From positions 62,001 through 126,000 of the forward strand of contig NW_003314407.1 in assembly GCF_000143415.4 (NCBI RefSeq): 64,000 nucleotides of DNA, written 5' to 3'. Below the pieces are notes generated by a model. It had not been told where the DNA came from. It searched no databases and saw only the letters and a list, made by a program, of their open reading frames with translations. This DNA comes from Selaginella moellendorffii (Eukaryota; Plantae; Lycopodiophyta). The translations under genes and the position numbers were made by a program. This document shows, piece after piece, positions 8,394 to 56,494 of this stretch (its first letter is position 1; each line of letters opens with the position of its first letter).

Positions 8394-9321
8394 TGTAAAC
8401 TCCTTGAATTTGGACTTCCCGGGAGGTCACTTAGCCCCAAGTATCCCAACACCCTTAACCAATTGAAAAAGGGGTGTTCATAGGCCCTTTCCTTCTATAT
8501 TTGAACCCCATGTATCATCTCTCGAGTTGTTCCCTTTGGTTGCTTACAATCCACCACGCTTCCCTGTAAGTTCACGCCCTCGTGAACGGAAGCTAAGAGT
8601 CGCAGCTCTCTCGCGAGCCTCGCTCTCTTGACACCCTATCCCTCAAGTCGTGGGCCCTTTCCTTCTATATTTGAACCCCATGGATCATCTCTCGAGTTGT
8701 TCCCTTTGGTTGCTTACAATCCACCACGCTTCCCTGCAAGTTCACGCCCTCGTGAATGGAAGCTAAGAGCCGCAGCTCTCTCGCGAGCCTCGCTCTCTTA
8801 ACACCCTATCCCTCAGGTCGAGCCCAGTGGGAGCAAACTAGACCAGCCAAATGTCAATCAACATATGGTGTGATTCCCCTAGCCAACCAACAGAGACGGA
8901 CTTGAGACTGCTCTGATACCAAATGTAAGCTCCTTGAATTTGGACTTCCTGGGAGATCACCCAACCCAGTACTATTCAAACCGAAAGACGCTTAACCCCA
9001 AGTATCCCAAAACCCTTAACCAATTAGAAAAGGGGGTGCACTCTTGTTCATGGGCCTTTTCCCTTTATATTTGAACCACATGGATTGTCTCTTGAGTCAT
9101 TCCTTTTGTTTGCTTACAATCCATCACGCTTCCCTACAAGTTCATGCTCTCGTGAACAAAAGCTGAGAGCCGTAGCTCTCCCAAGAGCCCCGCTCTCTTG
9201 ATATCCTACCCCTCGAGTCAAGCCCAGCAGGAGCAAATTGGACCAGCCAAATATCAATTAACATATGATGTGATTCCCCTAGCAAACCAATAGAGTCGGA
9301 CTTGAAACCCCTCTGATACCA
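8394..9321 (-). mobile_element. Tandem-array Cassandra-type TRIM with 5S rRNA-derived LTRs
   Basis: LTRs at 8394-8548 (internal deletion), 8651-8718 (partial, within a 170-bp duplication) and 8924-9118; ~200-bp internal domains; PBS complements at 8910-8921 and 9311-9321; PPT GGGAAGCGTGGTGGAT precedes each LTR on the minus strand; LTR contains a 5S internal-promoter-like segment. Confidence 0.9.
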
Positions 9322-9344
9322 GTTTAGGGTTTAGGGTTTAGGGT
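9322..9344 (+). repeat. Interstitial plant telomere repeat (TTTAGGG)3
   Basis: G(TTTAGGG)3T between the TRIM PBS and the gypsy LTR. Confidence 0.95.
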
Positions 9345-12300
9345 TGTAAGGAACCAACTCCCCGAGGTGTCATAGGCTAAAGGATCCCCAAAAGCATGAC
9401 TGAAATGACAAAGAGTTCATTGGATGGGACCGAGTCTGAGATGGAGTCCAAAACCAACTCTGAGACCAAGTTCCAGATAGAGTCCGGGATCGAGTCTGAG
9501 GCCGACTTAAAGACTGAGTTCAAGACCGAGTTCGAGACTAAGTTCGAGACAGAGTCTGAGATCCAAGATTGGGTCCAAGACTGAGTTCGAGGTTGAGTCC
9601 GAAGTCGAGTCCGAGATCGGGTCCGAGATCGAGTCTGAGATTGAGTTCGAGACTGAGTCCAAAATCGGGTCTGAGACTGAGTCTAAGTACTAATAGAGGT
9701 CAAGGGGTGAAAGTCCAAAGCATGCATCTCCCGGGGGGGGTTGCAGGGGGTTCCAAAAGTATAGTAGGGATAGTGAGGTCCAGGAATCAGTCTTGAAGGA
9801 ACTTTCCAGTGGTGCTTCCAAATTGACTTGAGGTTGAGACCGGGGCCGAGGGGCCTTGGGTGGGAGTGAGCATAGACTTGGGTGGTGCCGGAGGGGCCAC
9901 CCAAGGAAGTGCTCAAGAGCAGCTCCCACTCCCGAAAGGGAAACCGACTACAGTGCTCCCGGCTCATATGGAGTGGTGCCCCACTTGAGTACCTTATGGC
10001 TCATTGGTCCTCGCCCTTCCTAGGGGCTTGGGCCTTCCCTCCCTTCGGGATAAAAGTAGGGGGGGGGGGGGGGGGGTAGAGGTACCCATACCGGGCCGGG
10101 CCGTTAAGCCATGGTGTTTTGCCCCGGTGTCCCGAAGCAATTATTGCACCCAAGGCTTGGGATTTAGAGTGTCCCATGATCAAGTTTTGTTGTACCAAGG
10201 GTTGCTAGGAACCTAGAGGCTTGGTGTGCTTAGCTGCTTGTGCCTGTGGGGAGTGTAGCCAAACCTTAAGTCTAATCTAACCCGGGGAGGGGGATTGGGA
10301 GAGATTTGGGAATCCGTGGATGGATGTCTAACGCTTCGTTGCTCATGCAGTGAGTAGCTGAAACTAAGTAGAACCAAGTAGGAGCTGGTATAATAGGCGG
10401 GAACCTTGGTGAGGGAACTGAGCAAAAGCCAAGGCAATGTTAGTCAGATAGACAAGGTAAGCTAGCAAATTGGAAAGGAAAAATTTGTGGCTTACAATTT
10501 GGTATCAGAGCCTTTTCCTTAGTTCTAGCGAAGGATAGAGACGGATTGCTGGGAGATGGCAAATGCAAGAGTAAACGAACCAAGGCAGAGACAGAACCTC
10601 CGCCAGAGCTGGAGCTTCCGGTCGAACAAGAGGCTATGGATGAGGAATCCTTGTATGAGGAGGGCTCCAGTGATTAAACTTCCAAACAGGAGTCCGGTGG
10701 CGAGGTTCGGTCGTCCAAGGCTCGATTGGAAGTTCTAGAAGGACAATTGGTACAAACCAATACCCTGCTGGAGACTCTCGTACGCAAGCTAAAGTGTGAC
10801 TAGAAGCGAAAGAAAAAGCGAAAGACTACGAATGCTGGCAATGCAGAAAGTGTGGACCCTTTGGTAGGGACTGAGGCAAGACCAAACAAGGTCGAATAGA
10901 CCGAAGTGGAATCAGTCCCTCAGGCAGTTCCCAAGTACAAACCAAAGCCCCCACCGATTTTCAAGGGAGTGAGCAACTATAAGGTGGTGGAGGATTGGTT
11001 TTACGATATGGAGGACTACTTCCAAGCGTTACAGTTACCGAGCTCGGAGAAGGTCCCATGTGCAAAACCATACTTGGCAGATAATGCGAAGTCTTGGTGG
11101 AGAATGACAGAGGCCAACAAAGGACCGGTGGCCACTTGGGAAATGATGAAGGCGAGGATTCGTGCGACATACGTTCTTCAGAATGCTACTTTGCACCTAA
11201 GGGATGAGCTGAGTAGACTGAAGCAGATCGGAACCATTCAAGAGTATGTGAATGGATTTATGGCAAAGAGGATACTGGTCACGGATATGGGTGATATGGA
11301 TGCGTTCCATGCCTTCATATCATGCTTGCAAACCTGCGCTCACTGCGAGGTGATGCATTGGAACCCAACCAATTACAAAGAAGTGTTGGATGCGGCTATC
11401 AAGGTGCATTTTAACGATAACCTGCGAAAGGGGAACACGACGGGGTCGGGGTCCATGTTTAGCAAAAGGGCCAAACCAAGGGGAACATATAGCAAAGGGA
11501 AATTCAAGAAGAGCTTCTCTAAGAATGAGTCCTCGGGGTTTCGGAAAGGTAGATCCGATGGCTAGCGAGCGAGTACGTGGGGGAGTCAAGCAAAAAGAGA
11601 CAAACCCATGGATAAAAAGGGCAAGTTGGTTAGCAGCGTGGGAAACAACGTATGCTACAATTGCAGTAAAGTGGGACACTTCTCGAGGGAATGTCCCTAC
11701 CCAAAGAAGGCCAATATGGCCATTAAGTCGGGAAATCCAAACTGAGGTACGTGATCCAGTCCCTAACTCAAAGTTACTCATTATATAAACAACTTTGGTA
11801 CAGAGTCATTCGCAACATCTACTAGCCCTCTGAGGGAAGCTCGGAGGTAGCTTTGTTAAGATCCTTATTGACACGGGTGCTTCAAATAATTTTGTGGCTG
11901 CAGACATAATTCGGCAAGCTGGACTAACGGTGCAACGGCTGGGTGCATCAAGGATTATAAAGTTTGTTCAAGGCAGCCAAAGTACCAATGAGGTATTTCG
12001 ACAAGCGAGAATCGAAGTACGGATATGGAAAGTAGACATGGATTTCATAGTGTTGGACATGGCGGGATTTAACGTAATCTTTGGGATGGATTGGTTCAAT
12101 CGGTTCGTAGTAGCCCTGCATGGACAAGGTAGGAACCTTGTGGTATTAGCGAATGCCCAAGGAAGAAGATCTAGGGTGGAGGCCCAGGATCTAAAGGTAG
12201 GGCAATGCAAGGCCAAAGATTCCTGCCTAAACTTGGTGTCCACGAGAGGACAACTCACTAAAGGAACCAAGGTAGCATTTTTGTGCTTACTCTCGGTGAA

Positions 12301-14120
12301 GAGTGACAAAAAAATGGGAATGGAAGAAGTACCTTTAGTGATTCAGTGGGTGTTGGACCAATTCTAGGATACCATGCTGGAGGAGCTACCGGCGGGGTTG
12401 CCCCCTGCACGACCGATAGAACATAAGATTGAGTTAGTCGAGGGTGCTGAGGTGGTGGTTTGTCCCCCCTATCATTTGAACAAAAAGGAACTCGAGGAGC
12501 TCAAGTGCCAACTAAAGGAGTTAGTGGACAAAGGGTATGTTAGGTTGAGCAAGTCGCCATATGGAGCGCCGGTGTTATTTGTGAAAAAAAAAGATGGATC
12601 TATGCGCATGTGCATATACTACCGGTTGCTCAACAAATATATAAAGAAGAACAAGTACCCTTTGTCAAGGATTGAGACCTATTCAATAAGTTGGGAAAAA
12701 CAAAATACTTCTCGAGGATTGACCTAAGGTTAAGATATTACCAGATCAGGGGAGCAAAGGAAGATGTCGAGAAGACAACCTGTCGAACAAGGTATGGGAG
12801 CTTTAAGTTTCTGGTGATGCCCTTTCGGCTATACAATGCACCGGCAACATTTTCAGCATTGATGAACCACATCTTTGTACCCTATCTGGATCACTTTGTG
12901 GTCATCTATATTGATGATATCCTGAACTATAGCGAAATGCTAAAAGAGCATGCCAAACACTTGACGAAGGTGTTTAAAAAACTAAGGGAACACCAATTGT
13001 ATGCTAAAGAGAGCAAATGTGACTTTGCTCAACAAGAGGTAAAGTTTCTCGGGTATGTGGTGGGCAAGGATGGGCTCAAAGTGGACCCTGAAAAGGTCCA
13101 AGCGATCCAAGATTGAGAGTGGCCATCGAATGTACATGAAATAAGGGCATTCTTAGGGTTATGCAACTACTACCGAAAGTTTATCAGACACTATTTAAGA
13201 GTAGCCTTGCCCTTAACAAACCAAACGGGAAAAGGGAAGATGGTATGGACAGCAGAATGCGAGGCAACATTTGTTCACCTCAAAGGGAAGTTGAGGAAGG
13301 CTCCCGTGTTGGCATTACCAGACTTTGGTAAGGACTTTGAGGTAGAAACGGAGTCTTCGAACTTTGCGTTGGGCACAGTTTTGAAGCAAGACAACCATCC
13401 AGTAACGTTCTTCTTGAAGAAGTTGGACAAGGCTCAAAGGAAGTGGCCTACCCACGAGAAGCAATTGCTTGTGGTGGTCAAGGCGCTCAAGGAGTGGCAA
13501 CACTACCTTGGGAGACACTTCAAGGTTTACACAGACAATGTGGCAACAAAACACTTCTTATCACAGCCCGACCTGAGAGGGAAACAGGGTCGGTGGGCCA
13601 ATGCTTTGGCCAAGTTTGATTGCGAGATTCTGTACAGGCCTGGGAAGAGCAACATCGTGGCAAATGCGCTAAGTCGAAAAGCGAACTTGAAGTTAGCAAT
13701 ATCCAGCACAATAGCAACCTTTTGGGATGATGTGCGGACAGCATATGAGAACGATGGTTTAGCACAAGAAGTGTTGCTGAGGAATCTGGAGGCATGGGAA
13801 GCTTACCAGAGAAGTGAGCTGCCAATGGAAGAGAAAATGGGCTATGCGAAATGCAATGGACTCATCTATTACAAACAAAAGAGGGTGTATGTTCCAGAAG
13901 GGGGACTAATAAAGGTAGCCTTAGAAGAGTGTCATGATGGACCTCTTGCGGGACACGGCGGAGTGCCCAAGACGATGGGCTTACTCAAAAGGAAGTATCA
14001 TTGGCCAGATATGGCTAAGGACGTCCAAGACTATATAAAGACATGTTCAACATGTTAGCAAGTCAAAGCCGTAACTAAGGCTAGTGGGGGCTTGTTACAA
14101 AGCATCCCAATTCCAGATCG

Positions 14121-14301
14121 TTCGTGGAAATGTCTTACGATCACGAAACTCCCCCCAAGCGAGGGGTTCGATGCGATATTCGTGGAAATGTCTTACGATC
14201 ACGGGACTCCCCCCAAGCGAGGGGTTCAATGCGATATTCGTGGAAATGTCTTACAATCACGAGACTCCCCCCAAGTGAGGGGTTCGATGCGATATTCGTG
14301 G
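14121..14301. repeat. 58-bp tandem triplication within integrase
   Basis: Three slightly diverged copies of TTCGTGGAAATGTCTTACGATCACG...GGTTCGATGCGATA. Confidence 0.95.
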
Positions 14302-14638
14302 TGGTGGACTGATTTTCAAAGATGGCACATTTCATACCCACCACAACGGAAGTGGATGCGAAAGGTGTGGCGAAGCTGTTCTTCGAACAAATGGTTCGAG
14401 TGCAAGGAAGGCCAGAAGAGATTATCTCAAATCGAGATAAGATCTTCACCAGTAGGTTCTGGAGAACTCTCCTAGAACAGTATCACATTAAGTTAAAATT
14501 CAGCACAGCTTATCATCCACAGACAGGTATTGGGTATTAAGTCAAGTTTGATGGCACTAACACTGCTTGACAGATGGACAAATGGAAAGGGTGAATAGGC
14601 AGCTGGAGGATTATTTGCGATGCTATGTCTCGGGAGAC

Positions 14639-14832
14639 TGTAAGCTCCTGAGTTTGGACTTCCTGGGAGGTCACCCAGCCCAGTACTATTCAAACCCAAG
14701 GACGCTTAACCCCAAGTATCCCAAGACCCTTAACCGATTGGAAAAGGGGGTGCACTCTTATTTATGGGCCCTTTCCCTCTATATTTGAACCCCATGGATC
14801 GTCTCTTGAGCCGTTCCCTTTGGTTGCTTACA
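14639..14832 (-). mobile_element. Solo Cassandra-type LTR inserted in the gypsy integrase
   Basis: TGTAAGC...GCTTACA, 194 bp, flanked by 5-bp TSD GAGAC (14634-14638, 14833-14837); 5S-like segment at 14656-14710. Confidence 0.93.
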
Positions 14833-14859: not shown

Positions 14860-17800
14860 TGGTAAGCTAATTAAAATGGGTTAGCTAGGTCGACCAGGCA
14901 TAGAGAACTACACCCGACTCCCCACAGGGATGTCGAAACCGTAGACGTATTCTATGAAGGTTAGGTTCGAGTCCCAACCCCCTAGTAAAGCAAGGTTGGG
15001 TTCAAGTCCCAACCCCATACTAGGGCATGGTGGTATATTGACACCTATATTCCATTGTCATGGGCTTTTGGCCGGGGAGGCTAACTTAGGCACACTGCTA
15101 AGTGGGGGGATGCCCTTGGAGACATGGTCAACAAGTCGTATGATAAAAAGAGACTTTCGATATGGGCATCGAACTTCTTCTATGGGTGGTGGAGTTGCCG
15201 AAAGCATGGGAACTTAGCAAAAACCAAGGCAGTTGTAGCGCACGTGGTTTTGACCCTTTATCCTATGGTGATTTACCATAGGATAACACCACGAAGCGGA
15301 ACCTAAACCCTCTTTGTGCCACGTGACGGATGCCACATGTCACATGCCACGTGTCCATGCCACGTGTCCATAAAAACCCGAGGTTCAGGGCCTTGGGCCA
15401 CTGAACAAAGGAACGGTGCCAAACTCCCAAGCATGGAGCCAAGGAGTGACGGAACCGAACCACGGAGCAACTCCTAAGCATAAAGCCCAAGGAGCGAAGG
15501 GACAGGAGCCTGGAGCGACTTGGAACAGTCCTGGAGCAACCAGCATCCCAATGCCAGGACCAGCACACAAAACGGAGCCAAACGGAGTCTGGCGCTATTT
15601 CGGCATACCGGTGGCTTAACGTGAGGATATGGGTACTCCACCAAATAGCATGGAATGGAACTTGGGCTTAGACCCGAGCCGGACGCAGAACAAAGACAGG
15701 CACGCAAGCGGGAGCTAGACTATGCCTCAGGTTGGTCGGCCATGCCCGACCTACCCACTATCCCTACTATACATTTGGAACCCCCCACAGCCCCCCCCCC
15801 CCCTTGAGGAACACACGCTTTGGGCTTTCACCCCAAGCCTCCCTTAGTATCAGGAGTTAGTCTCTGGGACAAGCTCGAAACTTACTAAATATGGAATGTC
15901 CCTAGATTGCGAATTTAGACACAGGACGAACACCATTGTGTTCAGGCCAATCTCTACATTCTGTAGATATGTCAAATGAGCAAATCTGGACACTTTCCAT
16001 AAATAGCATTTGGGACCGAAATGAGACTAACACAAAGGGCATGATAGCGAGGGTGTTTGGCAGGCACGGTAAGCTATCATGTAGCGATATCGAGGGACCA
16101 ATCTCAATACGCGAGGGTTCTTGTCAAGCCAATGCAAGACAGAGCAAAAGAGAACTAACAAGCCGGGTCAAGTATGCTCAGCTAAATAGACACTTAGGAA
16201 TTCCTTCCTTATGCTCATCCGGCCAAGTACAGATGCAAAGTCCAGTTTACTAACACTTGAACAAGAGGGGCTGATAAAGGGAACCAGCAATACCGACCTC
16301 CTGCCATCGTGGCAGTAAGGTAAGAGTGTCCATAAGGACTAGTCGACAGGTAACTTTCGATACCCGAAGTCACATTCACGACACTCTCCCCCCCTTGGGA
16401 AGATCGACGTCCTCGTCGATGCATACTCGAGTCTAGAATACCGCCAAGGAAACAACTCCAGAAAAAGTTCACGGTACTCACACTATGTGAGAAATGCACC
16501 AACTTAAATGAGTTAGGGGGCAACCTCTTTGTCTAACGCGGATGCGCTACCAGCTCAGACACCTTCCGGCTGTCGCCGACAAGGAAATGACCAACGGAGT
16601 CAACCACCCTTGCTGCTCTGGGAGTCACCCAGCTTACAAAAGTGTGATACGCCCCTGCCCGCAGGGACATAGAGAGAGAAGCCAGAGGCCCCAACCCTCC
16701 TGAGCAAAGAAACCAAACCCGTCGGTAAGGTTTAGATAGACTACTGTAAACAGGCAGTTAGAGTTGTTTACACGGTCACGCCCTTTTAACGGAATAAGGA
16801 ACATCGACAGAAAGGCGGGTTATGTGACCAGTCGACAGTAGCTACCCCATGACTAAAGATTTCACCATGCACACGAAGTGCCGAAGCCAGTCTGCCTATT
16901 ACTGGCCCAAACTCAAAGATCAATAGATGGACAATATCAAAGTCATAGACAATGATATCTTAGAGACTCAATTATCAGAGAGGATATCTTAGATTAGAAC
17001 ACAAAAGTATTCCAAGTAAGTTATCATCCGATAAACAAGTAGTATAGTACAAGAACCACCAAGATCATCAAAATTGGTAAACATAGGATTCACCATCAAA
17101 CAAAATTCAATAGCAAGTATATCATCAAGTAAACTTAACGATAAAGTTTAACTATTAAAGATTGCAGATAGAATGCCAAACAACTTACAAAAGATAACTC
17201 AAAGAACACAAAGTATCATCAACTGGCAAGCAAAATACTCGCGAATGTATCACCCGGAGGAAATAACATTCCAATCTATCAGAACTAACTCGAGCAATAA
17301 TCAATAGAACAGAATGAATGCGGTAAGACCAACAAACACCCATTCATGCTAACTATCACAGAAACCAATCTGAATAGATCCCAACCAACAATACCAAGGA
17401 ACTCAAGTTGCCTAAGCAAGTGTCAGCAACATCCTACTGATGTCTCAAACCCAAAAGACCAATCCAAAACAAACCACAAAAAACATGTGGTATTGCGAAA
17501 AGCCAAAAGCTATCAAAAAGAATAACTAACTATCACGAAAGATCATCAATCATCCCATCAATAAAGAGATGCATAATCATCGTCTAAGAAAGAATCCACT
17601 ACCCCGAAGAATAGTGAATCATTCTATATCAACAACAATCAAGCAAAACCCTTGACAAGGATAATCCACTATCTTAGATGATAATTAATCATCACCAATG
17701 ATTGCCAGATGCAAATACTAACTTCATCAAAGCTAACAAGCCAAAATGCCTTCCCCAATGACTTCTAACAAATGGAACAACGAGTATAAAACTCAAAGAA

Positions 17801-20800
17801 CCAAAAGCTCGAAGAAGTCTATAGCTAAGTCTTTCCTAACAATGATCACGAGTCTCACATAAACTAACTTCAATGCCAAGAAGAAATCATGGTGCAACCC
17901 ACAATATTTTCCTTAACACATCCATAAGCTAAAATTCATAATGCAAAGCTAATAAAGAGCATATGTGCATCAATCCAAAAGCTAAGCATAACGAAGCTAT
18001 GCTGGACAAGTGATCACCAAACGATCCTCCATGAATCCATCCATAGCAAGACGTAACTCACTTCATAACAAGCACAAAAAGAATCATCAATGATCAATAT
18101 ATTTCAACTAAAATCCCATAAGGATTCAAATATTCCAAGATCGATCACTAACTCTCCCATTTGTAGAGTTAGCATAGTCCATGACTAAATCACTTTTCAA
18201 GGAAAAGCCAAAGCTCAACCCCTACTAAATAACCTCATCTAGAACACAACTAACTCAAACTTGCCACTCAATTCATTTGAACGTCAATACAGTTGCTAAT
18301 TAACAAATGCACCAATGCCAATAACACAAAGCCATAGCCAAATCATCAACACTATTTTTATCGAGACTAATAAAACACTCAATATCAATTCTATGGAGAG
18401 ATATCTCATTTCACTTGAATATCAACTTCAACAATGTCAATGAAAAGGCATCACTTCAATGTCATCAACACTATAACAAAGCTAGAAGAAAGCAAGAGTG
18501 AATCACCACTCAAAACTCTCTAGCAACTAAGCTAACCAAGGTCGAAGATACTTTACTTAATATCCGAAACCAATCCTTCAACAATACTCAGTTACAGATA
18601 ACACTTCCTCAAGGAGTGCATCACCACATCCAAGACTCAATGAAATCCAACACTATGAACTAAATGCAACCAAATGATATCGACAGAGGTAGAGTCGACA
18701 TGCCAACATGGAAAACCTCCGCATCCTCCGCAACCCCATTCGGTAAGCAAGCCCATCACTGATAAATCTTCATCGAGTGAAGCAAGTGTCAACAGTCCTT
18801 GACAAAGTCTACAAGCAATTACTAGTTGCCAAGCAACTAACCATCACTTTTTCAACTTGCTTTCATGAGACCCAAACACTAAACTCACGTCATTTAGTCA
18901 TATACTTGTCCAACATGAACGTGATACCTTCGCTATGAGATAAAAGTTCATTGACAAGCACAAACTAAATAACCACCCGAATCCAACTCAATTGCAATAA
19001 GCTCACTAATGCATTTAGCCACTAGCTCTGAGCATGCCTTGAAGAGGCTAGCTATGCGTAATCAACACTTAGTCGAAACTAAAGTGAAGACCACGAGATG
19101 GATCCATATCGGTACACAACCTCCTCATAGACAAAGCTACAGTATGGGTACTAACATCTCAACTACAAACAACTAAGTTGGACATCACCATCCTCAGCCA
19201 AGGCGCAAGACCACCAAGACCAAGTCAAGATCAGTGAGAGCTCACTACTCTCATAGAGTCTAACAAAATGCAGGGTGCAACCTGCCACCAAGCATAACAC
19301 TACAGAAGAAAGGCACAAGGGTCACCTTTCTTAGAAAAGTGCAACGGCCACTTTTCTACATCAACTCCAGACTCTATCCAACTCAATTGCCTTAGCCCCA
19401 AAGGTCAGCATCCCTTTCGGGTCGCATCATACAACTACCTACTAAGGTTTAAGCTAACCGAAGTCAACTCCAACCTCTTCACTAGTTTGTATCGGCTTAT
19501 GAAAACGGAATGGTTTTCGGACAAAGTGATAACAGATCAGCCATTAGAAAAGTCTGAGAAAATTTGTGGAAAATTTCCATCCTAGAAAAAGAATGACTCT
19601 CAGTCCAGGAATACAAACTTTCAAGACTTAACCAACTTCCTCCTACCAACAACTTCACATAGGTTCACCTCAACACAAATTCTCGAGACCCATAATATGC
19701 TTAAGCATCGAACATCTTTTTGCCCATTCTTTCGACATCCAACTCTGACATCCATAAAATGCAAATGGAACATCCAAGGCTTGATCACGAAGACTACATC
19801 TTTGGATATCCACATTGCACTAACACTTTTCTTCAATCACCTTCAAGATCCAATGTGAAGCCAAAATATTAACAAGAAAAATGACATGGAAAATCAAGCT
19901 CTAAGGAAACTTCCTCATCACTTAAAATAACAATGCCACTTTCACTAACACAAGTGCTAGTAATGTCAATGCCTCAACTTCACACCTTCTCTATCCAACA
20001 ATCTACTCCAAGTGTTAACGGATCAACTAATGAGCTATAGCAACTAAATGCTACAACCCTTTTCCAACACCTTAGTGGGCAAACTCAAGGAAACAAGGAA
20101 CCAACTTAAGCTTAGCATAATGGACCACTATCGAGAATCCCGTCAAAGCTACTATAATGCTACTTCGTGCAAGTAGACTACCTTCTCCATCAACCACTTT
20201 GGGGTTGATTATCGTTTAACCAAGCAACTTCGTAAACACATTGCTCACTATCACATGGATATGATATAAGTATCACAATGACTTGATCATCAATTGAGCA
20301 ACACCACGAACAATGCCAATGTCATTACTTCAAAGGTTTACATGAATATCAAGTGCCAACTCAACTTGACAGAATGCAACATAAATGCCACACTCTACCG
20401 ATAGAGATTTACAACACCCAACACCACTAACTTTTTGTTCACAACACAGACAAGCTCATGCCACTCGCTATCCAATCAAACTCAAAACTTAACCCAACAC
20501 CAAGCTACTCAGGGAACAATAGCTAGGTTCCCCGGAAAAGAATTGAGCATTGTAACCCAAGTCTTCCAATAGCGAGCTTAGACAAAATGGTTTAACGCTT
20601 CACCGCTATCCATCCCATAACTCACCACTTGTAAGACTATCATAATCAACATGCATCAAGATAGGGACTCTTGATTGCATAATGTGAATACGAACAATGA
20701 GTCAACACCTCGTTGCAAATCATCTCTCCAAGAAGAAAAGATGATTTACATGTTTGACCCTTCGTCCCTGACGACTCTCTTTTCGGTTTCATCTTTGACT

Positions 20801-22552
20801 AAACCTCAAGCTTGCTTTCGCACTGCCTTCAGTCCAATCCAAGAAAATTTATGAGAGAGCACGGCAATGATTACTTGAATCAATAGACTCATCCCTATAG
20901 TCTTAGTTGATCCACTTGTAACCATGCCTAGGAAGGATCCACTAGTGCCGTGCTAAACAGCTACGGACTAGCCTATTTGCCACTCATAGCAAACCCAGGG
21001 AAGGTTTACTTTCACCCATGGTACATGGAACAACTCATAGAACCACCAATAGGCTAACATTAATCCTGCCAACTCAAAGCATATCCTTGAGTTGCTAATG
21101 CGCCTCACTCACGAGTCCAAGCGTAAACTCGTGCTAATGGAGCATCTCAAATCCATCCTATGAGCCCAAGAGCAAGCTCACATTATTAGGTACAAAAGGT
21201 AACCAAAACCATACCCAAGGAACAAATGTGAACCCTTTGCACCAAACGTGTACCCACTCGGATCATCGTTTTCATCTCTGCGTATGCAACGAGACTAGTT
21301 GCCCAATCTCATTGTATAGTACTCGCTGAGACTCATCCTTTGATACCAAATGTAGCGCACGTGGTTTTGACCCTTTATCCTATGGTGATTTACCATAGGA
21401 TAACACCACGAAGCAGAACCTAAACCCTCTTTGTGCCACGTGACGGATGCCACGTGTCACATGCCACGTGTCCATGCCACGTGTCCATAAGAACCCGAGG
21501 TTCAGGGCCTTGGGCCACTGAACAAAGGAACGGTGCCAAACTCCCAAGCATGGAGCCAAGGAGTGACGGAACCGAACCACGGAGCAACTCCTGAGCATAA
21601 AGCCCAAGGAGCGAAGGGACAGGAGCCCGGAGCGACTTGGAACAGTCCTGGAGCAACCAGCATCCCAATGCCAGGACCAGCACACAAAATGGAGCCAAAC
21701 GGAGTCTGGCGCTATTTCGGCATACCGGTGGCCTAACGTGAGGATATGGGTACTCCACCAACTAGCATGGAATGGAACTTGGGCTTAGACCCGAGCCGGA
21801 CGCAAAACAGAGACAGGCACGCAAGCGGGAGCTAGACTATGCCTCAGGTTGGTCGGCCATGCCTGACCTACCCACTATCCCTACTATACATTTGGAACCC
21901 CCCACAGCCCCCCCCCCCTTGAGGAACACACGCTTTGGGCTTTCACCCCAAGCCTCCCTTAGTATCAGGAGTTAGTCTCTGGGACAAGCTCGAAACTTAC
22001 TAAATATGGAATGTCCCTAGATTGCGAATTTAGACACAGGACGAACACCAGGCCAATCTCTACATTCCGTAGATATGCCAAATGAGCAAATCTGGACACT
22101 TTCCATAAATAGCATTTGGGACCGAAATGAGACTAACACAAAGGGCATGATAGCGAGGGTGTTTGGCAGGCACGGTAAGCTATCATGTAGCGATATCGAG
22201 GGACCAATCTCAATACGTGAGGGTTCTTGTCAAGCCAGTGCAAGACAGAGCAAAAGAGAACTAACAAGCCGGGCCAAGTATGCTCAGCTAAATAGACACT
22301 TAGGAATTCCTTCCTTATGCTCATCCGGCCAAGTACAGATGCAAAGTCCAGTTTACTAACACTTGAACAAGAGGGGCTGATAAAGGGAACCAGCAATACC
22401 GACCTCCTGCCATCGTGGCAGTAAGGTAAGAGTGTCCATAAGGACTAATCGACAGGTAACTTTCGATACCCGAAGTCACATTCGCGACAGCAGTGTTGGT
22501 CGGATAGACGAGGTAAGCTAGCAAATTGGAAAGGAAAAATTTGTGGCTTACA
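14860..22552 (+). mobile_element. LTR remnant (14860-15233 + 22495-22552) sharing its 3' end with the element D LTR; interrupted by element C
   Basis: Joining 15208-15233 to 22495-22552 reproduces the last ~84 bp of the D LTR with ~6 mismatches; the upstream part is unrelated to D; left boundary uncertain. Confidence 0.6.
15234..22489 (-). mobile_element. Full-length non-autonomous LTR element (LARD-like), element C
   Basis: Highly similar LTRs 15234-16383 and 21351-22489; TSD GCAGT (15229-15233, 22490-22494); PBS TGGTATCAAAG at 21338-21348 (minus); PPT at 16384-16394; ~5-kb interior without long ORFs. Confidence 0.95.
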
Positions 22553-53649: not shown

Positions 53650-56494
53650 ATGGCGCCGATCTGGTCGGCGGCGCTGCCACTGCTGCTTCTTCTTCGTCAC
53701 ACCATAGGTAGGCGCGCGCCGGTGATTCTTTGCTTGTCCTGCATTCCTTGATCTCTTCCATAGTTCCGGGGCATAGCATTCCTGCTGCATTCTCATCTTG
53801 TTCCAGACTGGTCACTAACGCCTCCAGGAGAGAGCAGGATATCACGGTGTGGCACTCGATCCGGATCAAGTGGTAGCAGCGCACCGCCGACCTTGGCTGC
53901 TTGAGGAAATCGACCAGGGCCACCATCCTCCGGGTGTAGGACATCACCCTCCTGGAGTGGGGCATCATCCTCCGGGCGTTGGACACCATCCTCCCGGTGT
54001 TGGACACCATCCTCCCGGCGTTGGACATCATCCTCCTGGTGTCGGTCACCATCTCCCCAAGCGTAAGTCTGCTTAGCTTCTCTTGGCAGCAATGTAGATC
54101 CACTCATGCGTGAATTCATGCTCTACAGCCTCGTCGCTAGCTCGGGCATTTGTGGCACTGCAAGCCTGGAAACGCATGATCTTTCGCGACCCGCTAAACA
54201 TTACCGGGAGCTGGGTGGGCAGCGAAGTATGTAACTACAGAGGTGTCTTTTGCGGGCCTTCTCTCCACGACCCTACACTCCGCGTTGTGAGTGGGATGTA
54301 CGTGTACATGTAGACCATGCTTGCGCGGTATTTCACTGACCTTTTGATGCGTTGCTTGTTATTCCAGTGATCTGAATCACGCCAATCTTGGTGGTCAACT
54401 CCCCAGTGAACTGGGACTTCTGACCGAGCTCGGTATCTTGTGAGTGTGGTAAATTCATCCACCGTCCAAGAGTTCTTGCTTATCTTTTTCTTTTCCTTGT
54501 CCAGTCATGTGAACAGCAACGAATTTACAGGGGGGCTACCCGAAAGTCTGAAAAATCTCGTTCTCCTTGGAGAACTGTAAGCATTTGCTGTTTAGCTGTT
54601 GGTCTTGACGTTAATATTTTTACAGGGACGTAAGTAACAACAAGCTGTCTGGAGTATTTCCTGCTGTTACTCTGCAATTGCCAAGTCTTATATATCTGTA
54701 AGTTGACACTTTTTCTTCGATATGATATGTAAGTTTGGTACTTTTGCAGGGATATAAGATTCAACCGGTTTTATGGAAGCATACCCGCAGAAATCTTTGA
54801 TAAGAAGCTGGATGCACTGTAAGTTACTATACTGCAATTATCTGAGACAGGACTTGACGTTTGCTGTCTTCAGCTTTGTCAACAACAATAACTTCGGAAA
54901 TCCTATCCCGGCCAATTTCGGAAACTCTCCAGTTTCTGTTGTGTACGTGTCCTGTTGCACATTTTTTATGCTAAAACAATTTGTTCTGTTGCTGTCATGC
55001 TGTAGGGTCCTCGCCAATAACCAGTTCACTGGAAATATTCCGAATAGCTTAGGAAGCATGTCGAGGACATTAAATGAAATGTGAGTGACGACGAAATGTC
55101 GACCATACTGCGCCTGATCCTTGGAGTTCTATTGCAGAGTATTTCTCAACAACAGTCTCGCGGGTGCTCTACCATCAGAAATCGGACTTTTGAATCAAGT
55201 ATCTGTATTGTAAGATGTTTGTTTTTTGTTTCGAAGTTTCTAATACCTGCTCCTGTGTGAAGTGACGTGGGCTTCAACAAACTAAGTAGCGGTTTGCCCG
55301 ACAGCATCGCGAACATGGTTGAGCTGGTTGAATTCAACGTCGGAAACAATTTCCTCTCCGGAATTCTGACTGACAATGTCTGCAACTTGCCGAAGATAAG
55401 AAATCTGTGAGTTTCGCTAAACGGTCTTGTATGTATGTTAGTAAACCTTTTGTGTGTGCAGGACCTTTTCTAACAACTACTTCATTGGGGAGAGTCCCTC
55501 GTGCGCGTCTCTATCAAGACGAGGGTATGCATCGCACTCGTTCATGTTGTTTTTTGCGTGACGCAATTTGTTTTTGCAGTGTGACGGTAAGTACGAGCGG
55601 GAACTGTTTCTCAAGTCAGAGTGGCCAGAAGTCAGGCAAAGAATGCAGAGATTTCTACGGTAAGCTCGTTAGGAAGTTATGCGGATTGTGCTAACTCTTG
55701 TTTTTCTTCTTCTTCTTCTTCTCTCTCAGCTCCACCTCCACCTTCAGCACCAGCTGCTCCACCGGTGGGAACACCCCCACTATCTCCGACACCTCTCCCT
55801 CCTAGCCCGATATTTTTTCCACCTCCAACTCCACTGGCACCATTCGGCTCTCCACCTCCACCGTCGCCAATCGGCTCTCCTCCTCCCCCACTATCTCCGA
55901 CACCTCTCCCTCCTAGTCCGATTTTATTTCCACCTCCACCTCCACCGTCACCAACCGTTTCTCCTCCTCCAGCATCCTGTCCATCGGGATATAGCAGGGG
56001 TCAAAATTCGGGACATTGCTTCCAGCTTGTGAAGCAGCATGCAACCTGGAGCAATGCCGAGAAATATTGCGCACAACATGGGGGTCACTTGGCAGCAGTG
56101 GCGGATTTTAACGAACTCAAGGACATCGGCGACTTTTGCAGCCAGGCTCCCCCGAATCAAGGTAAGCACGTAGACTGTCTCGTTCGATATTTCTAACAGG
56201 AATTATCCTCTTGCAGCATTGGTGGATCCTTATAGTCCTAAAGGTCAAGGATGTTATCTGGGAGGCCAGAAAGCGAACGCCTCCTGGATCTGGCCGAGTT
56301 CTCCATGCATCAACTTCAACAGCAGTTACTGGAACTTCTTGGAGCCGAATAACTTGTATGGAAACGAAAACTGCGTGTCCATAAAGTATGAGCCCCCAAT
56401 CTTGCGAGCCTCGGCTTCTTCACTGGCATACATGCTCAACGATCTATTCTGCGAACACGAGCTTCCGTTCGTATGCGCACCAACAAGATGCTGA
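53650..56494 (+). CDS. LRR-extensin-like secreted protein with N-terminal His/Pro repeat and C-terminal C-type lectin domain
   Basis: Signal-like peptide; (GHHPPGV)n; LRX cap AFVALQAWK...WVGSEVCNYRGVFC; ~10 LRRs; Cys-rich linker; SP3-4 region; CTLD. Splicing of the first intron is ambiguous. Confidence 0.85.

What the first reader, a model, noticed from the sequence alone, without database searches (positions are those of the whole stretch)
14527..14573. 47-nt spliceosomal-type intron inside the gypsy integrase core
Seen: the insert GTATTG...CACTAAC...TTGACAG has a GT donor, a branch-point-like CACTAAC (14555-14561), an AG acceptor and an in-frame stop. Removing it restores YHPQT-DGQMERVN exactly, and its size is similar to host introns. 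GACAG occurs at both ends (14522-14526, 14569-14573), like a TSD that supplies the acceptor. Known: reverse transcription purges introns unless they are retained in genomic RNA (Ogre is a precedent). Inference: either a family-wide regulatory intron or a de novo, introner-like intron gain.
Basis: partly seen in the sequence, partly recalled or inferred. Interest (0 to 1): 0.8.

Follow-up and report, generated by a model that had tools for sequence, protein, structure and literature searches.

The report
Mini-intron splitting a retrotransposon integrase
A dead, cut-off copy of a very abundant spikemoss (Selaginella) jumping gene, which fits the published SM1-Galahad family, has a 47-letter host-style intron four codons before a catalytic residue of its integrase; the insert belongs to the whole family, not to this copy, but I could not show that it is spliced.

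Summary
At 14527-14573 a 47-nt GT...CACTAAC...AG segment with an in-frame TAA interrupts the integrase core. Removing it restores AYHPQT|DGQMERVN, which is continuous in database homologues.

A random 47-mer placed here would look this intron-like in about 0.07% of trials.

The host element is a decayed Ty3/gypsy copy. Its integrase is cut off at 14638 by a Cassandra LTR. Its LTR length, poly-G tract, tRNA-Met primer site and high copy number fit the published description of SM1-Galahad.

In a DNA-type run the family is extremely abundant. The insert's bin is as deep as its neighbours, and no listed joint or loose end removes the 47 nt. The truncation at 14638, which is private to this copy, is flagged clearly. 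So the insert is family-wide, not repair filler.

Splicing was not shown. Two RNA runs gave one read in total, and its bin arithmetic fits a 47-nt skip.

The direct repeat read as a TSD (target-site duplication) is mostly explained by splice-site consensus. No introner-like copies occur in the window.

The best reading is a retained spliceosomal intron that makes complete integrase depend on splicing, as in Ogre. The scan has already reported this family's integrase introns many times on other DNA of this genome.

The parts
9346..10496 (+). 5' LTR of the gypsy element: 1151 nt, TG...CA ends, an 18-G tract at 10059-10076 and 12-nt-period repeats at 9426-9690
   Evidence: Many DNA contigs have loose ends at 10496, which marks the LTR end. 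The length and poly-G tract fit the published SM1-Galahad description.
10500..10512 (+). Primer binding site TGGTATCAGAGCC, 13 nt, complementary to the tRNA-Met 3' end
   Evidence: Read. The paper describes a 13-bp tRNA-Met PBS.
10906..11746 (+). gag (Retrotrans_gag and a CCHC zinc knuckle), with stop codons private to this copy
   Evidence: Pfam PF03732, E 6e-10. The sequence CYNCSKVGHFSREC is read. The stop at 11563 is C (CAG) in the family majority.
11747..11803 (+). 57-nt intron-like piece at the gag/protease border (GTACGT...CCCTAAC...TACAG).
   Evidence: In the family majority its in-frame TAA reads CAA (11786 T>C), and the window lacks a GT after 11731. In the family the piece is therefore open and in frame.
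11855..14184 (+). Protease, reverse transcriptase, RNase H and integrase zinc finger, with a frameshift near 12676
   Evidence: Pfam RVP_2, RVT_1, RT_RNaseH and Integrase_H2C2. tblastn of 12 polyproteins.
14121..14301 (+). 58-nt unit repeated three times inside the integrase, private to this copy
   Evidence: Repeat family D5. Other copies skip it: joints 14141>14198, 14138>14256 and 14132>14263.
14238..14526 (+). Integrase catalytic core, last exon before the insert, ending ...STAYHPQT plus the G of the Asp codon
   Evidence: Pfam rve. tblastn identity 48-61% to homologues.
14527..14573 (+). The finding: a 47-nt phase-1 GT-AG intron-type segment. The donor is CAG|GTATTG, the stop TAA is at 14538-40, the branch-type CACTAAC is at 14555-61 (13 nt from the A at 14560 to the 3' end), and the acceptor is TTGACAG|AT.
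   Evidence: Composition is 60% A+T and 32% T, against 52-56% A+T and 22-23% T in the flanking exons.
14574..14638 (+). Next integrase exon (DGQMERVNRQLEDYLRCYVSGD), carrying the Glu that lies 36 positions after the second triad position. It is cut off at 14638.
   Evidence: Other family copies continue ...CAGACCGATTGG|GTAAGT..., that is QTDW followed by a second donor (loose ends at 14638: 27 contigs in X1, one of 99 nt in X11).
14639..14832 (+). Cassandra-type LTR (starts TGTAAGCTCC) that truncates the element
   Evidence: Repeat families D4, D7 and D8: 90% identity to 8935-9118.

Best explanation
The 47 nt are a fossil copy of the first integrase intron of a very high-copy Ty3/gypsy chromovirus-type family of Selaginella, which by description is SM1-Galahad. 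The intron belongs to the family and not to this copy, which means the element transposes from RNA that still contains it. Unspliced RNA serves as the genome. It can encode Gag, protease, RT, RNase H and an integrase stub that stops four codons into the intron, before the catalytic Glu. Read-through cannot rescue the integrase, because 47 is not a multiple of three. A complete integrase can only come from RNA in which the host spliceosome has removed the intron, together with a second intron that starts just after ...QTDW in other copies. Splicing would then set the amount of integrase relative to the upstream proteins. The weak donor (GTATTG, no G at +5) would let many transcripts stay unspliced for packaging. 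What is shown here: the anatomy, the exact restoration of the frame, that the signals are not chance, and that the insert is family-wide. What is inferred: splicing in vivo, and its role as a gate. The window copy itself is dead. It is about 5% diverged from the family majority, mostly by C>T and G>A changes, it has stops, frameshifts and a private 58-nt triplication, and its 3' third has been replaced by a Cassandra LTR.
For: 1) Anatomy and frame restoration. 2) Chance: only 0.065% of random 47-mers at this site give GT..AG plus a CTRAY motif. 3) Family-wide presence: 31,849 contigs of DNA-type run X1 lie on the element. The summed depth of the bin holding the insert (14518-14640: 669,291) equals that of its neighbours (660,584 and 764,112). 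The same holds in run X11 of a second organism label (420, against 531 and 782). None of the 15 best-supported joints, the 5 listed indels or the 12 best-supported loose ends removes or stops at 14527-14573. The private breakpoint at 14638 is flagged by 27 contigs and the private 58-nt repeat by several joints, so a private insert would have been seen. 4) The family continues after 14638 with QTDW and then GTAAGT, which is a second donor. 5) The paper on SM1-Galahad found no intact copy among hundreds. Its reconstructed ORF of 3885 bp ends in the core integrase, with the chromodomain in a separate short ORF downstream, and it never mentions introns. In the window, the distance from ATG 10556 to the intron's stop is 3985 nt, or about 3880 once the private indels are subtracted. 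6) The size fits the host. ORF-joining candidates in the window's host genes are 46-62 nt long. S. moellendorffii's intron-length distribution groups with the short fungal type (PMC6157073). 7) The insert is richer in T than its exons. 8) The single RNA read has bin depths of 0.2 and 0.6 and runs over the end. That fits 37 nt before 14526 plus 65 nt after 14574, and it excludes a continuous read reaching the end.
Against: No direct view of a spliced junction was obtained. RNA runs X21 and X22 gave 1 and 0 reads, so expression and splicing are untested. The inference from the one read rests on rounded bin depths. One search shows only 15 of 38 joints and 12 of 486 loose ends, so a minor intron-less DNA form cannot be excluded. 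I could not fetch a single other copy as sequence: searches found no protein above 60% identity, and searches were blank. The conservation of GT, the branch site and AG relative to the intron interior is therefore unmeasured. The donor is weak, and the branch-type A lies only 13 nt from the acceptor. The assignment to SM1-Galahad is by description, not by sequence alignment. A closely related intact family (SM2-Galahad) could supply integrase in trans.
Confidence: 0.7

Rival explanations
1. The insert is family-wide but is not an intron. An ancestral 47-nt insertion killed the integrase, and the family has since multiplied as a non-autonomous parasite using integrase supplied in trans, for example by the intact relative SM2-Galahad. 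The GT/CTAAC/AG resemblance would be fortuitous.
For: No intact copy of SM1-Galahad was found among hundreds, while SM2-Galahad has a single intact ORF with integrase and chromodomain. Splicing was not shown here. Parasitic subfamilies of this kind are known, for example BARE2 on BARE1.
Against: The intron-like signals arise in only 0.065% of random inserts. A second interruption in other copies begins with a perfect GTAAGT directly after a codon boundary. An upstream piece also has GTACGT...CTAAC...CAG. Three such pieces in one element are hard to get by chance. The one RNA read fits a 47-nt skip.
Confidence: 0.17
2. The insert is private repair filler or an indel of this dead copy.
For: The copy is heavily damaged, with stops, frameshifts, a private 58-nt triplication and a truncation. 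A 5-nt direct repeat flanks the insert, as can happen after end-joining repair.
Against: Depth across the insert's bin is not lower than in neighbouring bins, in two runs. No joint, indel or loose end is listed at its borders, although this copy's truly private features are all flagged in the same output. The published reconstruction, built from other copies, also stops its ORF in the integrase core.
Confidence: 0.04
3. The intron was gained by insertion of an introner-like mobile unit that made GACAG as a target-site duplication. This would have happened either in this copy or in the family's ancestor.
For: GACAG flanks the insert. The intact sister family SM2-Galahad has one uninterrupted ORF, so the introns were either gained in the SM1 lineage or lost in the SM2 lineage.
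Against: No similar sequence occurs elsewhere in 64 kb, host genes included: the best other match is 15 nt, E 0.46. CAG at both ends is expected from the exon-end and intron-end consensus, which leaves a 2-nt coincidence. A gain in this copy alone is excluded by the family-wide presence.
Confidence: 0.06

Closest known systems
Ogre (Ty3/gypsy, Tat lineage) of legumes
   Same: It is an LTR retrotransposon whose genomic copies keep a spliceosomal intron inside the coding region. Splicing joins reading frames, and the genomic RNA must stay unspliced. A 2025 review cites it as one of two plant exceptions to intron-less LTR elements. BARE authors describe it as splicing between ORFs.
   Different: From my own knowledge, Ogre has one larger intron between the protease and RT regions. 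Here the intron is 47 nt, lies inside the integrase catalytic core four codons before the Glu, and is one of several. The lineage also differs: Galadriel/Galahad-type chromovirus rather than Tat.
BARE1, Drosophila copia and Arabidopsis EVADE (Ty1/copia) subgenomic splicing
   Same: The host spliceosome acts on the element's RNA to set protein ratios, and only unspliced RNA is replicated. The BARE1 donor is also CAG/GTAT, and its intron is U-rich.
   Different: In those elements splicing removes or disables pol so that only Gag is made, and the unspliced RNA encodes everything. Here the logic is reversed: unspliced RNA cannot encode an essential enzyme.
SM1-Galahad as published (Int J Plant Genomics 2012, PMC3350952)
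   Same: LTRs are above 1 kb (1076/1146 nt, against 1151 nt here). There is a poly-G tract of 11-25 nt (18 here), a 13-bp tRNA-Met PBS and hundreds of copies. No copy is intact, and the long ORF ends in the core integrase.
   Different: The paper treats the breaks as absence of an intact copy, lists extra short ORFs, and never mentions introns (0 occurrences). I made no sequence alignment to its reconstruction.
Ordinary host introns of Selaginella
   Same: The size falls within the 46-62 nt range of candidate host introns in this window. It has GT-AG ends, T enrichment, and a CTAAC like the one in the LRX gene intron at 56162-56216.
   Different: It sits in a retroelement that is copied through RNA, where introns are normally lost. 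Its donor lacks the +5 G that I required when picking the host candidates.

Membership tests
Ty3/gypsy LTR retrotransposon | Domain order gag - protease - RT - RNase H - integrase on one strand | tested here: met
   Pfam hits in that order. Twelve polyproteins align collinearly.
Ty3/gypsy LTR retrotransposon | Two LTRs, a PBS, a PPT and a target-site duplication | tested here: inconclusive
   The 5' LTR (9346-10496) and the PBS (10500-10512) are present. The 3' LTR, PPT and TSD are absent because the copy is cut at 14638.
SM1-Galahad (Selaginella moellendorffii) | LTR above 1 kb with a poly-G tract, a 13-bp tRNA-Met PBS, and high copy number | tested here: met
   1151-nt LTR, 18 G's and a 13-nt PBS. 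31,849 contigs were laid on the element. The comparison is with the text.
SM1-Galahad (Selaginella moellendorffii) | Sequence identity to the published reconstruction; group I chromodomain downstream | not testable with these tools
   The reconstruction is not held in any tool. The chromodomain region is missing from this truncated copy.
U2-type spliceosomal intron | GT...AG ends, a branch-site motif upstream of the acceptor, and removal that restores the reading frame | tested here: met
   Probability by chance is 0.065%.
U2-type spliceosomal intron | Length and composition like those of the host's introns | tested here: met
   Heuristic host candidates are 46-62 nt. The literature reports a short, fungal-type intron-length distribution. 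T content is 32% against 22-23% in the exons.
U2-type spliceosomal intron | Exact excision in RNA | tested here: inconclusive
   One read in X21 and none in X22. The read's bin depths fit a 47-nt skip, but the junction itself is not displayed.
Intron retained by a retroelement family (Ogre-type arrangement) | The intron is present in the bulk of genomic copies | tested here: met
   This is indirect evidence. Depth over the insert's bin is even in two runs, and no listed joint, indel or loose end lies at its borders, while private features are flagged. I did not align individual copies.
Introner-like element | Many near-identical copies serving as introns of unrelated host genes, with target-site duplications | tested here: not met
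   There is no second copy in the 64-kb window. A genome-wide test was not possible.

The most novel reading that the evidence does not exclude
A highly successful LTR retrotransposon family has placed its integrase active site behind host splicing. Several micro-introns, one of them four codons before the catalytic Glu, are kept through thousands of rounds of copying via RNA. Only spliced RNA yields integrase and only unspliced RNA is inherited. This would be a splicing gate on integration that has not been described for the family, and it would explain why the family was reported as having no intact copy.
Probability: 0.6. Interest if true: 0.75.

Novelty: new variant of a known kind. Interest (0 to 1): 0.55.

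Why it matters
Reverse transcription of spliced RNA normally purges introns from retroelements. A 2025 review names only Ogre and EVADE as plant exceptions. A family with hundreds to thousands of copies that keeps micro-introns inside the integrase catalytic core would show a different use of host splicing. Here splicing would be required to make an essential enzyme, rather than used to make extra Gag. It would also correct the published view of SM1-Galahad as lacking intact copies. And it would give a simple system for asking how spliced and unspliced RNA pools are sorted between translation and packaging. This window's copy adds little on its own: it is a dead, truncated example, and the scan has already reported the same family feature many times elsewhere in this genome.

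Tried and rejected
1) I tried to fetch other copies through proteins, and all three attempts failed.
- The word search with the 283-aa RNase H/zinc-finger ORF gave at best 45% identity.
- The word search with the 68-aa integrase piece gave at best 60%.
- The exhaustive representative search gave at best 47%.
- The family is not in those protein collections, so no locus could be fetched with the look-up of encoding contigs.

2) Exact DNA patterns found nothing. I tried the family's continuation after 14638 and the intron's 3' half, in metagenome and viral contigs. This was expected for a plant element.

3) A second copy within the window: there is none.

4) RNA evidence. The two RNA runs I laid hold essentially no reads of the family. 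This is no test of splicing and no evidence of silence.

5) My first ORF-joining intron finder was too permissive, giving 379 candidates. The stricter version is still heuristic, and I use it only for the size range.

6) Findings look-up by sequence was blank.

7) Target-site-duplication reading of GACAG: rejected as unneeded, because CAG is expected at both positions from the splice consensus.

8) Read-through or frameshifting as a way past the insert: rejected. There is a TAA at codon 4, and 47 is not a multiple of 3.

Full report
**Observation**

The sequence at 14527-14573 reads GTATTGGGTATTAAGTCAAGTTTGATGGCACTAACACTGCTTGACAG. The upstream frame ends ...KFSTAYHPQT plus one G. After the insert the frame resumes with AT GGA CAA ATG GAA..., giving DGQMERVNRQLEDYLRCYVSGD. 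Read through, the frame stops at TAA 14538-40.

Twelve unrelated gypsy polyproteins and several integrase fragments from the protein collections run straight through HPQT-DGQTE. The window changes frame across exactly these 47 nt.

GACAG stands at 14522-26 and again at 14569-73. The deletion can therefore be drawn in six equivalent ways, and only one of them gives GT..AG.

I placed 200,000 random 47-mers from the window at this site. GT..AG was possible in 0.74% of trials, and GT..AG plus a CTRAY motif 8-40 nt from the 3' end in 0.065%.

**Setting**

The host is a Ty3/gypsy element on the + strand:
- LTR at 9346-10496: 1151 nt, TG..CA ends, a run of 18 G.
- Primer site TGGTATCAGAGCC at 10500-10512.
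- gag, protease, RT, RNase H, integrase zinc finger and integrase core, in that order.

Counting from the position of the second triad residue (S-N-R-D here, S-D-R-D in most homologues), the Glu of DGQME lies 36 positions on. That is the D(35)E spacing, established knowledge for retroviral-type integrases. The insert therefore splits the Asp codon four residues before the catalytic Glu.

The copy is dead:
- It has stops and frameshifts.
- A 58-nt unit is repeated three times at 14121-14301.
- The integrase ends at 14638, where a Cassandra-type LTR (TGTAAGCTCC...) begins. That LTR is 90% identical to the one at 8935-9118.

**Is the insert private or family-wide?**

No second copy exists in the window. 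I could fetch no other copy as sequence. The one reads call is therefore the main evidence.

- In DNA-type run X1, 31,849 contigs at 90% identity or more lie on 10400-14640, so the family is extremely abundant.
- The bin that holds the insert (14518-14640, of which 38% is insert) has summed depth 669,291. The two bins before it have 660,584 and 764,112.
- In run X11, from a second organism label, the corresponding depths are 420 against 531 and 782.
- None of the listed joints, indels or loose ends lies at 14526/14574.
- The same output does flag this copy's truly private features. The 58-nt repeat is skipped by several contigs. At 14638, 27 contigs in X1 and one in X11 run on with CAGACCGATTGGGTAAGTCATTTGGGACTT.
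- That continuation reads QTDW, the expected next integrase residues, followed by a perfect GTAAGT donor. It is the start of a second interruption.

A private 47-nt insert would have produced a joint or loose ends of similar weight. I conclude that the bulk of the family carries the insert. The caveat is that only 15 of 38 joints and 12 of 486 loose ends were displayed.

The same table shows the window copy differing from the family majority at about 235 places in 4241. Most are window-T for family-C and window-A for family-G, which is the signature of an old, methylation-decayed copy.

**Which family?**

Earlier notes of this scan named SM1-Galahad, and I checked the paper (PMC3350952). SM1-Galahad is described as follows:
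- It has hundreds of copies, about 95% alike.
- Its LTRs are 1076/1146 nt, with poly-G tracts of 11-25 nt.
- It has a 13-bp tRNA-Met PBS.
- No intact copy was found.
- The reconstructed ORF of 3885 bp ends in the core integrase.
- Two further short ORFs lie downstream, and the last one carries the chromodomain.
- The word "intron" does not occur in the paper.

The window copy matches every descriptive feature. From ATG 10556 to the stop inside the insert is 3985 nt. Subtracting the private net +107 nt of the repeat region and adding the 2 nt missing after 11731 gives about 3880, close to the published 3885. The published reconstruction, built from other copies, therefore seems to break at the same place. 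This is a match by description. I could not align sequences.

**Is it spliced?**

This was not shown here. RNA runs X21 and X22 (12% of each run was read) gave one read and none.

The one read has mean depth 0.2 over 14376-14517 and 0.6 over 14518-14640, and it is flagged as running over the end of the stretch. A continuous read that reached the end would fill the last bin to about 1.0. A read covering 37 nt up to 14526 plus the 65 nt of 14574-14638 gives 28/142 = 0.20 and 74/123 = 0.60. The read fits a 47-nt skip, but this is arithmetic on rounded numbers for a single read, so it is only a hint.

**Is it intron-like for this host?**

- An ORF-joining heuristic on the window's host genes gives candidate introns of 46-62 nt. 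One example is 56162-56216, with GTAAGC...TTCTAAC...TTGCAG.
- A survey of intron-length distributions groups S. moellendorffii with the short fungal type, unlike other land plants.
- The insert has 32% T against 22-23% in the exons.
- Its donor GTATTG lacks the +5 G, and the branch-type A is only 13 nt from the acceptor. Both are weak points, though a weak donor also suits an intron that must often stay unspliced.

**Mechanism**

The likeliest reading (0.7) is a retained spliceosomal intron of the family.
- Unspliced RNA is the genome. It encodes everything up to an integrase stub that lacks the Glu.
- Spliced RNA is needed for complete integrase.
- Read-through cannot substitute, because the TAA stop comes at codon 4 of the insert and 47 is not a multiple of three.

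Rivals:
- A family-wide dead insertion, with integrase supplied in trans by, for example, the intact SM2-Galahad (0.17).
- A private filler (0.04).
- An introner-type insertion with GACAG as target-site duplication (0.06). No look-alike exists in the window, and CAG at both ends is expected from the splice consensus.

**Comparison with known cases**

- Plant LTR elements generally lack introns, with Ogre and EVADE as the named exceptions.
- BARE1, copia and EVADE splice to make Gag-only RNA. Ogre splices between ORFs.
- The present case works like Ogre in that splicing is needed to read on into pol.
- It differs from Ogre in lineage, in intron size, in the number of introns, and in position inside an active site.

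I class it as a new variant of a known kind.

**The scan's own record**

The scan has already noted this family's integrase introns many times on other DNA of the same genome (80 notes hold the words intron, integrase and gypsy). Several follow-up agents report exact removal in RNA-type assemblies. I used those notes as leads, not as evidence. In particular I could not repeat the RNA result.

Noticed in passing
window 9311-9345: Three plant telomere-type units (TTTAGGG x3, 9323-9345) lie between an inverted PBS-like CCTCTGATACCA, at the end of the Cassandra array, and the TG start of the gypsy LTR.
   Followed up: no
window 8922-9321 and 14639-14832: The gypsy fragment is bracketed on both sides by Cassandra-type LTR copies that are 90% alike, with a spacing of 5714. 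This suggests recombination or a chimeric integrant rather than a simple nested insertion.
   Followed up: partly
window 14121-14301: A 58-nt unit is repeated three times inside the integrase N-terminal region. It is private to this copy, since other family copies skip it and carry GGACTTCAT... there.
   Followed up: partly
window 14433-14435: AAT (Asn) stands where most gypsy integrases have the second catalytic Asp (SNRD instead of SDRD). Some database homologues share the Asn. It may be a G>A decay of this copy or a lineage trait.
   Followed up: no
window 11731-11803: This is the 57-nt intron-like piece at the gag/protease border. In the family majority its TAA is CAA (11786 T>C), and the window lacks a GT after 11731. 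In the family the piece is therefore in frame and open, and splicing there would be optional rather than required.
   Followed up: partly
window 15234-22000: A separate LTR element lies here. Its two LTRs (15234-15885 and 21351-22000) are 96-98% alike, so it is much younger than the gypsy copy.
   Followed up: no
window 9426-9690: Inside the gypsy LTR there is an array with a 12-nt period (GAGTC(T/C)GAGA(T/C)C-like units). A similar array lies at 2414-2814.
   Followed up: no
window 10400-14640 versus run X1: Of about 211 listed kinds of difference from the family majority, 127 are window-A for family-G or window-T for family-C. This transition bias is typical of deaminated methyl-cytosines in an old silenced copy.
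   Followed up: partly
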